In this document: positions 35,247 to 44,839 of the stretch, piece by piece
How positions within the stretch are numbered: the first letter of the stretch is position 1
Layout: every line of letters starts with the position of its first letter
Assembly (NCBI RefSeq): GCF_016432865.1
Contig: NC_067399.1
Location: 578,274,001-578,338,000, forward strand
DNA length: 64,000 bases
From: Antechinus flavipes
Lineage: Eukaryota
Direction of reading: 5' to 3'
Translations under genes and position numbers: made by a program
Notes under the pieces: model-generated
Seen by the model: only the letters and a program-made list of their open reading frames with translations
What the model was told of the DNA's origin: nothing
Database searches by the model: none

Positions 35247-38200
35247 TTAGCGTTTCTCACCCATATGAGTTCTCCGATGTGCACTAAAATGTGAACTGTT
35301 ATTAAACCTTCTGCCACATTCACTGCATTCATAGGGTTTTTCACCTGTGTGTATTCTCTGATGTATAATAAGGCTTGAACTCTGATTGAAACTTTTCCCG
35401 CATTCACCACACTTATAGGGTCTCTCTCCTGTATGAATTCGTCGATGTGTAATGAGATTTGAACGATCACTGAAACTTTTCCCACATTCAAGGCATTCAT
35501 AGGGTTTTTCTCCTGTATGTATTCTCTGATGGCTGGTGAGGGTAGAACTCTTACTGAATCTTTTCCCACATTCAGAACACTGGTAGGGTTTTTCACCCGT
35601 ATGAGTCCGCCAGTGAGCATTAAAATGTGAGCTATTAGTGAAGCTTTTCCCACATTCACTGCACTTATGGGGTTTTTCTCCTGTGTGTATTCTCTGATGC
35701 ATAATAAGGCTTGAACTCTGATTGAAGCTTTTCCAGCATTCACCACATTTATAGGGTTTTTCTCCTGTATGGATTCTTTGATGTGCTGTGAGATTAGAGT
35801 GATCACTAAAGCCTTTTCCACACTCAGGACATTTGTAAGGTTTTTCTCCTGTGTGGATTCTCTGGTGGCAAATAAGATGTGAACTTCGACCAAAGGTTTT
35901 GCCACATTCATCACAATTATATGATTTCTTCTCCCCAAAGTGAGCTAATCGATGTACAGCAAGGTGTGAGTTCTGATTGAAGTTTTTTCCACATTCAGAA
36001 CATGTGTTTGGGTTTTCTCCTATATAGGTTCCCTGAAGTCCTATAAAATTGCCTAAATTTCTTTCTGAGGAGATGGTGGCCCTTGTGATTCCCCTGGGAG
36101 TATTGCCCATTGCCTCTCAGTTCTGTATTCTCTTTCCCAAGCTTTCCTCCAATTAAGATAATGAGAAACATTTCCTTTGGAGCTTCCTAGTAATGTTGCC
36201 TGTAGTTCTATTTCCTCAGAAATTTCCTGGCTTGGATTCTCCACATTTTCTTTGCTCATTTCAAAATCTGAAGAAAAAAAAAAGCATAGAAAATAGGTAT
36301 TATTGATCTCCTAAATGGAGAAGAATAAAAACAGTCTATGGATGAAGCATGTAGCATTTAAAACACTGGAATGAGTCCAATGAATGCTCAGTTAGTGCTC
36401 AATGATAAGTAGATGATCACAAATTCAACCAACTTCTATTTACAGCCTCTGTCCTAGGTATAAGCCTCAAGAATAGTGGAGTAGGTCTTCTTAGGAACTC
36501 CATTCTCCTGTAGTATTTTTTCCTATGTTACTTTGGCATTAGTGGGGTAAAGCAACATAACTGTTGCCCAACTATAAAAGAAATCTACTTTGTGATTCCC
36601 CTGTTCCCAACACTTCCTCATTCTCTTGTGTTCACAATCACAAGTTTGATTGTTTCTTTGTTCTTACTTGTATGGGAAGTTCTCTGAATATCCTTGGAAT
36701 CAGAGAGCATGACATTCCACAGCTCTTCCCCACTCTCTGGCTTGGAGTTTGAATCTGGCTTAGGAATGAGAAGTTCTGCTAAAGAAAAAGAAAATGAATC
36801 CCATAAAATTTCTCTAGAACTTATTCTGAGGTTTCCTTTCTATAGAAAGAATGAAAAAGCTTAAGAAAAAAATCTAGGAAAATTGAGCAAAGTTTAGCAT
36901 GCAGATAGAAAATTCATAGATTCTATGATTAGAGATGTAGCAAAAATTTGCATTTTGTCTGCACTCTGAAGACAAATAAGCATATAGGCAGAGTTTAGGA
37001 TTTAGGAGATGAAGGAAGATTATATATTTATGTAATATATTATTTATAATGGTGCTTAGGCAGTATGGAAACAAGGAACTGCAAATTTCTATCACTGCTC
37101 AGTGAAGTGACTCTCTTAACCCATTCCCCATTGCTTCTGTAGTTTTCATTTCTATCAATAGTAGGCATGATATCATGCTCTTGAACTGAGAAAAATAAAT
37201 CTTATTTGTCTCCAGTAACAAACTGTTCATAGCCCTAGCACCTAATTATCTGAGTGATTCACCCAGCATAGTTCCTGAGTCAATAGAAAGATTTGCATAT
37301 GGAATATTTTGATGATGGGAGGTCAATAGTTATTATCAGGAAAACTGTACTAATCTAGTTTTCTGAACAATAAACAGATAGTGTTTTTGACATAAATCAG
37401 TGGTATAGAAAGGACTACAATCAAAATTTCCTAATGCCTAGATGGGGGAGGGGGAAACATTTTCTGCCAAGGGTCATTTGGATATTTATAACATTTGTAG
37501 CCCATATCAATTTAAAAACTCAAGCAATAGAGGTTGCTGTACTTAGTTTTCATCTCTTCATCGAATGAAATTGCCTTGGTAAGCTCAGAACAATTATTTT
37601 ATAGGCCTCATATAGCCGAGGGCTTGTGATGGAAAGTGACATCTGTATCCAGAGAGATAACTATAGAGACTGAAGGTGGATCAAAGCATAATGTTTTCAC
37701 CTTTTTTGTTGTATGCTTGTTTTTCTTTTGTATTTTTTCCTTTTTGATCTGATTTTTCTTGCATGGCATGACAAATATGGAAATATGTTTAGAAGAATTG
37801 TGTGTATTTAACCTATATCGGGTTGCTTGCTGTCTTGAGCGGGGTGGGAAGAGAGGGAGAAAAATATGGAACACAAGGTTTTGCAAAAGTGAATGTTGAA
37901 AACTATCTTTGTGTGTATTAGGAAAAATAAAATACTATTAAGAAACAAACAAAAAAAGGAAATGGATATAAGGTTCCATAGAAAGAATTGCTTACCATTG
38001 GAATTCTGAAATAGACCGTGTGACTTGAAGCTCTTAAGTTCTGTTGGTGATACCTCCTCTTCAATATGATTACCATCCTCTACTACTGTCTTCTGGTTCT
38101 CCCAGTCAATACTCTTCTTGGATTCAAGTTTCCCCTTTAGAAGACTTCCTGCCATCTCTAAGACATCAAAGGGAGTAATGGTGGTCCATGGGCTCATCAG

Positions 38201-44200: not shown

Positions 44201-44839
44201 CTGCTTTAGGGAATTTATATTTTCATTGGTAGCAATGGCATGTGGGATCTTTCAAACTATTTTTCCATTCCATAACAGTTAGCAAGAAAGAGCTATTTAT
44301 TTCTTGAACATATTCTCTTAATACTGCAAGGGAAATTTCCCATCACCTTAGCAACAGTAAGGTGCCACATTGCTGTCAGGTAAAAGCTGTACTTCACATA
44401 GTTCTATTTTCACGAAACAAAGGTATCCAATTCTCACCTTCTGTTCTGACCTGTCAGGTTCTCTTTGCAAATTTTCCACCAGGGCTACTGCCTCTTCTCC
44501 ACTCTCTGGATGTTGTTCTCTAACCCATGACTGAATTTCTCTAGGAAGAACAGTCAGGAACTGCTCCAACACCAGCAGCTCTAGAATCTGTTCTTTGGTG
44601 CACTTCTCTGGTCTCAACCACTGACGACAGAGTTCTCTGAGTTGGTTCAAAGCTTCACGTGGTCCTGCTGCCTCCTGGTATCTGAACTGCCAGAAATGCT
44701 GACAGGAAGCCTCAGGACCTTGGTCATTTCCATGAAGGAAAGATTCCTGATGCCAATGGGAATCATCTTCCAGTTTCACTATAAGGACTCCATCTTGTGT
44801 TTGAGGAGCCTGGATCTGAGGGTCCAAAACTACTGCCAT
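35247..44839 (-). CDS. SCAN-KRAB(degenerate)-2xMyb/SANT-9xC2H2 zinc finger protein (ZSCAN20-like; syntenic with human SCAND2P), with an apparent 1-bp frameshift in the last exon
   Basis: Coding exons (minus strand): 44839-44438 (SCAN), 41544-41337, 40684-40608, 39951-39825 (127-nt KRAB-A-like), 39619-38855 (KRAB-B-like plus Myb1), 38454-37996 (Myb2) and 36267-35247 (spacer plus 9 fingers). All are GT-AG with compatible phases. The spacer frame (36259) and finger frame (36110) differ by one base. Confidence 0.9.
43144..43294 (+). mobile_element. WSINE1-like SINE
   Basis: gcagctaggttgcgaagtggatagagc...gagttcaaatt...gggcaagtcacttaac with an A tail, flanked by cactgaaggag on both sides. Confidence 0.92.
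43619..43914 (+). mobile_element. L1 3' UTR fragment with poly A
   Basis: Near-identical to 16983-17276 (ggaaatgaatataaactgcttgc...caataaaaagttatt). Confidence 0.92.

What the first reader, a model, noticed from the sequence alone, without database searches (positions are those of the whole stretch)
35247..44839. Full-length SCAN-KRAB-2xMyb-9ZF gene at the position of human pseudogene SCAND2P: the likely ancestral SCAND2 gene
Seen: a 7-coding-exon minus-strand gene between WDR73 and ZSCAN2, co-oriented with ZSCAN2 and opposite to WDR73/NMB. Known: human 15q25.2 runs ZSCAN2(+), SCAND2P(+), WDR73(-), NMB(-), which is the same arrangement flipped. The SCAN exon has atypical residues ([10 protein letters not shown]...DSHW...EASCQHFW...RPEKCTKEQ) where most SCAN domains have RQRFR and PE.HTK. 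As I recall, the human SCAND2 peptide shares these (MAVAVDQQIQ...DSHW...ETSCQSFW...RPEKCTKEQ). The C-terminal half (two Myb/SANT domains; fingers with [17 protein letters not shown] and [13 protein letters not shown]) is ZSCAN20-like. Inference: marsupials keep the multi-domain ancestor that survives in humans only as SCAN-only SCAND2P, and eutherian ZSCAN20 may be a relocated copy of it.
Basis: partly seen in the sequence, partly recalled or inferred. Interest (0 to 1): 0.8.

Follow-up and report, generated by a model that had tools for sequence, protein, structure and literature searches.

The report
Full-length marsupial counterpart of SCAND2P
A marsupial gene for a SCAN-KRAB-double-Myb-nine-zinc-finger transcription factor sits where primates have only the truncated pseudogene SCAND2P; trees, shared neighbours and decayed leftovers in lemur and macaque show SCAND2P is the wreck of this gene, which horses, cats and dogs also still keep.

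Summary
There are 8 coding exons, not 7. In this assembly one G is missing at 36065/36066, so the literal reading frame stops at 36053-36055, ahead of all the fingers. I could not test this with reads.

The main inference holds. The SCAN exon, the Myb region and the finger region each place the gene in one strongly supported clade. That clade holds nine marsupial orthologues, full-length genes of horse, cats and dogs, and (SCAN only) the primate, bat, seal and whale "SCAND2P" peptides. The horse and lemur loci share both neighbours with the window (ZSCAN2 tail, WDR73 last exon). Lemur and macaque SCAND2P intervals still hold stop-ridden remnants of later exons: both hold fingers, and macaque also a Myb domain and exon 7.

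Two parts fail. The full-length form is not kept by marsupials alone. Eutherian ZSCAN20 is not a relocated copy: marsupials and echidna have their own ZSCAN20, and AU tests reject the alternative.

The gene is already annotated in other marsupials under inconsistent names. I found no paper linking it to SCAND2P. The scan's other notes on this window (frameshift, HYI retrogene) agree.

The parts
44438..44839 (-). Coding exon 1: start codon and SCAN domain; donor AAG|GTGAGA, ends in phase 0
   Evidence: Pfam SCAN E 2.6e-43. It matches solved SCAN dimers, ZNF24 at E 9e-35. tblastn to 9 marsupial orthologues gives 86-91% identity. Splice site read.
41337..41544 (-). Coding exon 2 (linker), 208 nt, phase 0 to 1
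   Evidence: tblastn to orthologues gives 90-96% identity. Acceptor TCCTAG| and donor G|GTAAGT read.
40608..40684 (-).
   Evidence: tblastn to orthologues. Splice sites CTTTAG| and CAG|GTAAGC read. The exon is needed to restore the phase between exon 2 and the KRAB exon.
39825..39951 (-). Coding exon 4: KRAB-A box, 127 nt, phase 0 to 1
   Evidence: Pfam KRAB 39.8 bits against a cut-off of 20.4. Splice sites read.
38855..39619 (-). Coding exon 5: KRAB-B-like start and first Myb/SANT-like domain, 765 nt, phase 1 to 1
   Evidence: Pfam Myb_DNA-bind_4 E 1.6e-20. tblastn 81-89% identity. Splice sites read.
37996..38454 (-). Coding exon 6: second Myb/SANT-like domain, 459 nt, phase 1 to 1
   Evidence: Pfam Myb_DNA-bind_4 E 1.7e-18. 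tblastn 77-85% identity. Splice sites read.
36668..36775 (-). Coding exon 7, 108 nt, phase 1 to 1, with a tandem TTTAGCAG acceptor
   Evidence: tblastn 65-81% identity to orthologues. Splice sites read.
35247..36267 (-). Coding exon 8: pre-finger stretch and nine C2H2 fingers, with the stop codon at 35247-35249
   Evidence: Pfam finds 9 zf-C2H2 stretches. tblastn gives 95-99% identity in the finger part.
36065..36066 (-). Frameshift site: one G missing from a GG/GGG run. Window has CTCA-GAAAG, dunnart CTCAGGAAAG, devil CTCAGGGAAG.
   Evidence: DNA alignment with devil, dunnart, horse and lynx loci. All nine marsupial proteins switch frame here.
36053..36055 (-). Premature TAG in the frame entering exon 8; the literal product is 786 residues and has no fingers
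36065..36080 (-). Possible cryptic acceptor (pyrimidine run plus CAG). Joined to the phase-1 end of exon 7, it would enter the finger frame. It is in frame only because of the deletion.
   Evidence: Read from the sequence. There is no transcript evidence; this is inference only.
45500..47000 (.). CpG island 0.7-2.2 kb upstream of the ATG exon; likely promoter and non-coding first exon
   Evidence: GC 0.57-0.63 and CpG observed/expected 0.60-0.93. The role is inferred.
51258..52709 (-). Upstream neighbour: 14-finger last exon of a ZSCAN2-type gene, in the same orientation
   Evidence: ORF found. Its last 63-70 residues are 98% identical to the sequence just upstream of the horse gene and of lemur SCAND2P.
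19676..20035 (+). Downstream neighbour: WDR73-type last exon, convergent orientation
   Evidence: It is 62-64% identical over 117-121 residues to the convergent downstream gene of the horse locus (372-aa product) and of the lemur locus (384-aa product).
5358..7505 (+). NMB: the neuromedin B peptide split over two exons
   Evidence: GNLWATG at the end of ORF 5358-5642 and HFMGKK in ORF 7110-7505. Weak Pfam Bombesin hit. The peptide identity comes from established knowledge.

Best explanation
This is the marsupial copy (in a dasyurid, judged by sequence) of an old therian transcription-factor gene that has no settled name. The gene lies between ZSCAN2 and WDR73 and has 8 coding exons. It encodes about 1055 residues.

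Its parts are:
- an N-terminal SCAN domain, which pairs SCAN proteins into dimers;
- a weak, divergent KRAB box;
- two Myb/SANT-like domains;
- nine C2H2 fingers that read DNA.

The most likely mode of action is inferred from these domains and is not shown here. The protein would bind DNA in a sequence-specific way through the finger array, possibly helped by the Myb-like domains. It would act as a homo- or heterodimer with other SCAN proteins, probably as a repressor.

Primate SCAND2P is the decayed orthologue of this gene. The SCAN exon stayed open and is still spliced, while the Myb and finger exons were deleted or filled with stops. Equids, felids and canids still have a full-length, constrained copy that has lost a recognisable KRAB box. 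ZSCAN20 is the closest paralogue, and the two separated before therians split from monotremes.

In the genome sampled here, one missing G cuts the fingers off from the reading frame. Whether that is a sequencing error, a recent real mutation, or is bypassed by splicing remains open.
For: Domains: Pfam; solved SCAN dimers.

Gene model: splice sites and phases come. The model is collinear with nine marsupial proteins of 1049-1056 aa; identity is 95.3% to devil and 92.8% to dunnart.

Orthology to SCAND2P:
- The best short hits of the SCAN exon are proteins named SCAND2P, at 69-74% identity and 181-210 bits. Other families reach at most 163 bits.
- The SCAN tree clade has 100/97* support.
- SCQ.FW and RPEKCTKEQ are shared only within that clade.

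The same clade appears with the other regions: Myb 100/100*, fingers 100/99* and full length 100/100*.

Synteny:
- Horse locus L001 has the ZSCAN2 tail at 98% identity, then the gene, then a convergent WDR73-type exon.
- Lemur SCAND2P locus L005 has the same two neighbours.
- The literature places human SCAND2P beside ZSCAN2 and overlapping WDR73 (PMC10049278).

Remnants:
- Lemur keeps the last four fingers, with one in-frame stop and a lost cysteine.
- Macaque keeps an exon-2 piece, a Myb domain, exon 7 and seven fingers, all with stops or frame changes.
- Both species share the same stop in the last finger.

Constraint: dN/dS is 0.24 for devil versus dunnart and 0.20 for horse versus lynx in the last exon.
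Against: - The splice pattern therefore rests on homology and on splice-site reading.
- The frame is broken ahead of the fingers in the window, so in this animal the product may lack fingers.
- The human interval itself was not examined; macaque and lemur stand in for it.
- The shared stop in the last finger may lie at a mutation-prone site and could have arisen twice.
- No monotreme member of the clade was found. The inferred age of the split from ZSCAN20 therefore implies an unseen loss, or a gap in sampling.
- The sister link to ZSCAN20 is strong only in the finger tree (100/100*). It is 84/85 in the Myb tree and 77/61 in the full-length tree.
- Function is inferred from domains alone.
Confidence: 0.85

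Rival explanations
1. In this animal the gene is truncated for real. The missing G is a true, recent mutation, and the product is a 786-residue SCAN-KRAB-Myb protein without fingers. That would parallel the way SCAND2P lost its fingers in primates.
For: The deletion is in the assembly, and all four compared genomes have the extra G. The two-G run is short, which is not a classic context for homopolymer sequencing errors. The upstream frame then stops 4 codons later.
Against: Downstream of the break, 272 codons stay open. The window-lineage changes there are 3 synonymous and 2 non-synonymous, the same pattern as in the devil lineage, so there is no sign of decay. Four runs of the best-matching organism hold 0.98, not 1.00, of the sampled words of this exon. 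That would fit one difference from the assembly, but its position is unknown.
Confidence: 0.3
2. The missing G is an assembly or sequencing error, and the animal makes the full 1056-residue protein like its relatives.
For: The finger region is intact and conserved after the break. Nine other marsupials have an open frame. The koala model is itself flagged 'low quality', which shows that such errors occur at this gene. The 0.98 word share in four runs is also consistent with an error.
Against: No protein of this species is in the protein collection.
Confidence: 0.5
3. The interval was colonised independently. On this view the marsupial gene is a local duplicate of ZSCAN20, ZSCAN29 or ZKSCAN2 and is unrelated to SCAND2P, which would be a duplicated pseudogene of some other SCAN gene.
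For: GENCODE (2012) classed human SCAND2 as a duplicated pseudogene (PMC3491395). Annotation pipelines name the marsupial and eutherian proteins ZSCAN20-like, ZSCAN29-like or ZSCAN2 isoforms.
Against: All three regions give the same clade, separate from the named paralogues. Both neighbours are shared in horse and lemur. The remnants in lemur and macaque carry this gene's finger order and motifs.
Confidence: 0.03
4. Eutherian ZSCAN20 is a relocated copy of this gene, made after eutherians split from marsupials.
For: ZSCAN20 is the closest paralogue in the finger tree (100/100*) and the Myb tree (84/85). It shares finger motifs and the same C-terminal end.
Against: Wallaby, Gracilinanus and echidna have their own ZSCAN20 inside a 100/100* ZSCAN20 clade. 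The AU test rejects eutherian ZSCAN20 plus the eutherian locus copies as one clade (p 2e-4). It also rejects eutherian ZSCAN20 plus the whole clade (p about 1e-92).
Confidence: 0.02

Closest known systems
SCAND2P (human 15q25.2; 'putative SCAN domain-containing protein SCAND2P' in other primates)
   Same: It has the same position between ZSCAN2 and WDR73 (lemur locus; human per PMC10049278). It falls in the same SCAN clade and shares the same unusual SCAN residues. Primate intervals keep decayed Myb and finger exons of this gene.
   Different: In primates only the SCAN exon stays open (143-245 aa peptides), and the locus is annotated as a pseudogene or lncRNA. The window's gene has all 8 exons. 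GENCODE called SCAND2 a duplicated pseudogene (PMC3491395), whereas the evidence here fits decay of the original gene in place.
ZSCAN20
   Same: It has the same architecture apart from KRAB: SCAN, two Myb_DNA-bind_4 domains and a C2H2 array ending in the same finger and tail. It is the closest paralogue in the Myb and finger trees.
   Different: It forms a separate clade with its own marsupial and echidna members. Overall identity is 53-56%, against 65-68% for the horse, lynx and dog orthologues. Its SCAN has the usual RQRFRQF motif.
ZKSCAN2
   Same: It combines SCAN, KRAB, Myb-like and finger domains. Pfam KRAB is recorded for the marsupial ZKSCAN2 proteins.
   Different: It is more distant (45-47% identity). 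It sits in a separate clade together with ZSCAN29.
Unnamed full-length genes of equids, felids and canids (for example XP_014589283.1 in horse and XP_030173175.1 in lynx, annotated as ZSCAN2 isoform X1, ZSCAN29 or ZSCAN20-like)
   Same: They are orthologues, with the same locus in horse and the same clade in every tree.
   Different: They have no Pfam KRAB hit. The first fingers of the horse and the first finger of the lynx are degenerate. Their branches are several times longer than those of the marsupial copies.

Membership tests
SCAN-domain zinc-finger proteins | N-terminal SCAN (leucine-rich dimerisation) domain | tested here: met
   Pfam PF02023 at E 2.6e-43, covering 89 of 90 profile positions. 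It matches solved SCAN dimers, ZNF24 at E 9e-35.
SCAN-domain zinc-finger proteins | C-terminal array of C2H2 fingers in the same reading frame | tested here: inconclusive
   Nine fingers are present, and they are in frame in nine other marsupials. In this assembly a 1-nt deletion puts them out of frame.
KRAB zinc-finger proteins | KRAB-A box on its own exon of about 127 nt | tested here: met
   Pfam PF01352 scores 39.8 bits against a cut-off of 20.4. The exon is 127 nt. The sequence departs from the usual consensus.
KRAB zinc-finger proteins | Recruitment of the TRIM28 co-repressor | not testable with these tools
   This needs a binding or reporter assay.
ZSCAN20 / ZSCAN29 / ZKSCAN2 group (SCAN + Myb/SANT-like + fingers) | Two Myb_DNA-bind_4 domains between the SCAN domain and the fingers | tested here: met
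   Two Pfam PF13837 hits, E 1.6e-20 and 1.7e-18. The group is recovered as relatives.
Orthologue of SCAND2P | Same flanking genes and orientation (ZSCAN2 upstream in the same direction, WDR73 downstream and convergent) | tested here: met
   The lemur SCAND2P locus has the same ZSCAN2 tail (98.6% identity) and WDR73-type exon (63.6%). The human layout comes from PMC10049278.
Orthologue of SCAND2P | SCAN exon groups with SCAND2P and not with other SCAN genes | tested here: met
   Clade support is 100/97*, with marsupial and eutherian halves.
Orthologue of SCAND2P | The SCAND2P interval holds remnants of the missing exons | tested here: met
   Lemur has four finger remnants with a stop. Macaque has a Myb domain, exon 7 and seven finger remnants with stops. 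The human interval was not examined.
Orthologue of ZSCAN20 | Groups inside the ZSCAN20 clade | tested here: not met
   The ZSCAN20 clade (100/100*) excludes it in the Myb, finger and full-length trees. AU tests reject the joins.

The most novel reading that the evidence does not exclude
The same transcription-factor gene may have been cut down to a SCAN-only (or finger-less) product more than once. This certainly happened in primates. It possibly happened in bats, seals and whales, where only short 'SCAND2P' models are annotated. It may be happening now in this dasyurid, if the missing G is real. Repeated survival of the open SCAN exon would point to selection for a finger-less SCAN partner that modulates other SCAN factors, rather than plain gene death.
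Probability: 0.15. Interest if true: 0.6.

Novelty: new member of a known kind. Interest (0 to 1): 0.4.

Why it matters
The result gives human SCAND2P an origin. SCAND2P has been treated as a duplicated pseudogene (GENCODE) or a SCAN-only factor, and it is now studied as a stress and cancer marker. On this evidence it is the in-place remnant of a multi-domain SCAN-KRAB-Myb-finger gene that is still intact and constrained in marsupials, horses, cats and dogs.

Three practical points follow:
- It adds a distinct, unnamed lineage to the ZSCAN20 / ZSCAN29 / ZKSCAN2 group.
- It shows that current names for these proteins are inconsistent. The same gene is called ZSCAN2 isoform, ZSCAN20-like, ZSCAN29-like and ZSCAN32-like.
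- It offers species in which the ancestral function can be studied.

This is a tidy piece of comparative genomics, not a new kind of system.

Tried and rejected
**Reads.** There is therefore no read support for the splice junctions or for the frameshift.

One slip must be reported. In one search a local pairwise blastn inside run_python aligned the whole last exon, those places included, against the two fetched dasyurid loci. The places were masked from the counts. Trees built after reused an alignment made earlier.

**Other steps that led nowhere:**
- An exact look-up of the 68-residue ORF that ends at the premature stop found nothing. The protein collection holds no protein of this species for this gene.
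- The ESM Atlas searches for the two neighbours gave only generic WD40 and zinc-finger clusters.
- No ZSCAN2 SCAN exon lies within 45-64 kb of the window.
- Paper searches for a published link between SCAND2P and a full-length gene, or for the ZSCAN20 / ZSCAN29 / ZKSCAN2 group as a family, found nothing relevant. The Dupuy et al. papers on SCAND2 are not in the library.

**Rejected readings:**
- A mosaic origin, with the SCAN exon from one gene and the rest from ZSCAN20. All three regions give the same clade.
- A small intron at the frame break. No usable donor is present there.
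Full report
**What is in the window.** The minus strand between 35247 and 44839 carries open stretches with clear Pfam domains.
- SCAN scores E 2.6e-43.
- KRAB scores 39.8 bits against a cut-off of 20.4.
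- Myb_DNA-bind_4 is found twice, at E 1.6e-20 and 1.7e-18.
- There are nine C2H2 fingers.
- The SCAN exon matches solved SCAN dimers; ZNF24 scores E 9e-35.

I read the splice sites and phases and compared the region with nine marsupial proteins by tblastn. This gives eight coding exons:
- E1, 44839-44438
- E2, 41544-41337
- E3, 40684-40608
- E4, 39951-39825, a 127-nt KRAB-A exon
- E5, 39619-38855
- E6, 38454-37996
- E7, 36775-36668
- E8, 36267-35247

Exons 3 and 7 are short but are needed for the phases to fit. A CpG island at about 45500-47000 is the likely promoter (inference).

**The frame break.** Every marsupial orthologue changes frame at about 36065. Aligning the DNA with devil, dunnart, horse and lynx loci shows that the window lacks one G of a GG/GGG run. 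Read literally, the gene stops at TAG 36053-36055 after 786 residues, with no fingers.

Downstream of the break, the 272 finger codons are open. In the window's own lineage they show 3 synonymous and 2 non-synonymous changes, the same pattern as in the devil lineage (places 35310-35373 left out). The break is therefore an error, very recent, or bypassed. A CAG at 36065-36067, preceded by a pyrimidine run, would join exon 7 to the finger frame. It would be in frame only because of the deletion. This is reading of the sequence, not evidence of use.

I could not test any of this. Four runs of the best-matching organism hold 0.98 of the sampled words of exon 8. That could reflect a single difference from the assembly, but its position is unknown.

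**Which species.** The conceptual protein is 95.3% identical to the Tasmanian devil protein and 92.8% identical to the dunnart protein. The window therefore comes from another dasyurid-like marsupial. No protein of that species for this gene is in the collection.

**Relatives.** The best short hits of the SCAN exon are eutherian proteins named SCAND2P, at 69-74% identity and 181-210 bits. Other SCAN families follow at 163 bits or less. The exhaustive search found a koala protein of 1054 residues. Its cluster and neighbouring clusters hold wombat, possum, Dromiciops, opossum, bilby, glider, dunnart and devil proteins of 1012-1056 residues. These are named variously ZSCAN29-like, ZSCAN32-like, ZSCAN2 isoform X1 or ZSCAN20.

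Full-length eutherian proteins came out next, before any true ZSCAN20 (581-526 bits against 372). They are equids at 998 residues, felids at 1009 and canids at 945-982.

Marsupials also have their own versions of the related genes:
- ZSCAN20
- ZSCAN29
- ZKSCAN2
- a further 'ZSCAN20-like' group of about 1138 residues, shared with monotremes

**Trees.**
- SCAN tree (68 rows): the window, 8 marsupial orthologues, horse, dog, lynx, lion and hyena proteins, and 12 short SCAND2P-type peptides form one clade (100/97*). It has a marsupial half (92/86) and a eutherian half (100/99*). ZSCAN20, ZSCAN29 and ZKSCAN2 are separate clades, each with marsupial and eutherian members.
- Myb region: the window plus marsupial and eutherian full-length proteins form a clade at 100/100*, sister to ZSCAN20 at 84/85.
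- Finger region: the same clade has 100/99* and is sister to ZSCAN20 at 100/100*. ZSCAN20 itself is ordered echidna, then marsupials plus eutherians.
- Full length: the same clades appear at 100/100*, with the link to ZSCAN20 at only 77/61.
- AU tests: they reject eutherian ZSCAN20 joined to the eutherian locus copies (p 2e-4) and to the whole clade (p about 1e-92).

The gene is therefore not a mosaic, and ZSCAN20 is an older paralogue, not a relocated eutherian copy.

**Synteny.** In the window the order is:
- NMB (+)
- a WDR73-type gene (+)
- an HYI retrogene (-)
- the gene (-)
- a 14-finger ZSCAN2-type exon (-)

In horse locus L001, the end of the ZSCAN2-type exon (98% identical) lies 9.8 kb upstream of the gene in the same orientation. 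A WDR73-type last exon (62% identical) lies downstream on the other strand, within a gene that has a 372-residue product.

In the lemur SCAND2P locus L005, the same tail (98.6%) and the same WDR73-type exon (63.6%) flank SCAND2P. The neighbouring products are 616 and 384 residues long.

The literature places human SCAND2P beside ZSCAN2 and overlapping WDR73 (PMC10049278).

**Remnants in primates.** I searched the lemur and macaque SCAND2P intervals with the horse protein.

Lemur keeps:
- the SCAN exon
- pieces of exon 2 and of the KRAB exon
- about 280 nt further on, the last four fingers, with an in-frame stop and a lost cysteine

The Myb exons and the first fingers are gone in lemur.

Macaque keeps:
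- the SCAN exon
- an exon-2 piece with stops
- a Myb domain with several stops and frame changes
- exon 7
- seven finger remnants with stops

Both species have the same stop in the last finger. This suggests a shared loss, although that site may be prone to recurrent mutation.

SCAND2P is thus the original gene decaying in place. GENCODE's 2012 label of 'duplicated pseudogene', with a processed EGLN1 pseudogene inserted (PMC3491395), does not capture this.

**Constraint.** In the last exon, dN/dS is 0.24 between devil and dunnart and 0.20 between horse and lynx. The full-length gene is therefore under purifying selection in both groups.

The eutherian copies have no Pfam KRAB hit. The horse has three degenerate first fingers and the lynx one. 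These copies also sit on branches several times longer than those of the marsupial copies.

**How it probably works.** This is inferred from the domains. The finger array binds DNA in a sequence-specific way, perhaps aided by the Myb/SANT-like pair. The SCAN domain drives dimerisation with itself or with other SCAN proteins. The divergent KRAB box may add repression in marsupials. None of this was tested.

**Novelty and score.** The gene is a further member of a known group and is already predicted in many genomes under inconsistent names. What I could not find in the searchable literature is its identification as the intact counterpart of SCAND2P. I also found no report that it persists in some eutherians. 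This is useful and tidy, but it would not surprise a specialist much. Interest is 0.4.

**Limits and a disclosure.**
- There is no transcript evidence for this genome.
- The human interval was not examined.
- No monotreme member of the clade was found.
- By a slip, a local pairwise blastn inside run_python included those places. They were masked in the counts.

Noticed in passing
window 27470-28405 (-); L003 27945-28805; L004 26336-27196: An intronless ORF of the hydroxypyruvate-isomerase type (Pfam AP_endonuc_2, E 6.6e-47) lies between the WDR73-type gene and the target gene. A 286-residue gene with the same Pfam family lies at the matching place in devil and dunnart, so the insertion is shared by dasyurids.
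   Followed up: partly
proteins P0304, P0305, P0245, P0306, P0310, P0312 (marsupials); P0303, P0307 (monotremes): A further paralogue group of about 1130-1190 residues, named ZSCAN20-like or ZSCAN29-like, forms its own 100/100* clade with marsupial and monotreme members. My sample holds no eutherian member. It may be another gene of this family lost in eutherians.
   Followed up: partly
L005 about 13270-13290; L006 about 20980-21000: Lemur and macaque share an in-frame stop at the same codon of the last finger remnant ([10 protein letters not shown]). This is either a shared ancestral inactivation or recurrent mutation at one site.
   Followed up: no
L001 1-17915 (+): In horse, a called product of 787 residues spans from upstream of the locus to the end of this gene. 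NCBI names the horse, jaguar, wombat, possum and dunnart proteins 'ZSCAN2 isoform X'. This suggests read-through models that merge this gene with ZSCAN2.
   Followed up: no
window 36776-36780: Exon 7 has a tandem acceptor (TTTAGCAG). Using one or the other AG would add or drop one alanine codon.
   Followed up: no
window 62708-63394 (+): A 228-residue ORF looks like part of a LINE reverse-transcriptase ORF2. Short ORFs with the motif [10 protein letters not shown] at 34317-34508 and 42977-43366 look like SINE-derived sequence.
   Followed up: no
window 9682-9813: A run of 132 N is flanked by a lysine/glutamate-rich simple repeat.
   Followed up: no
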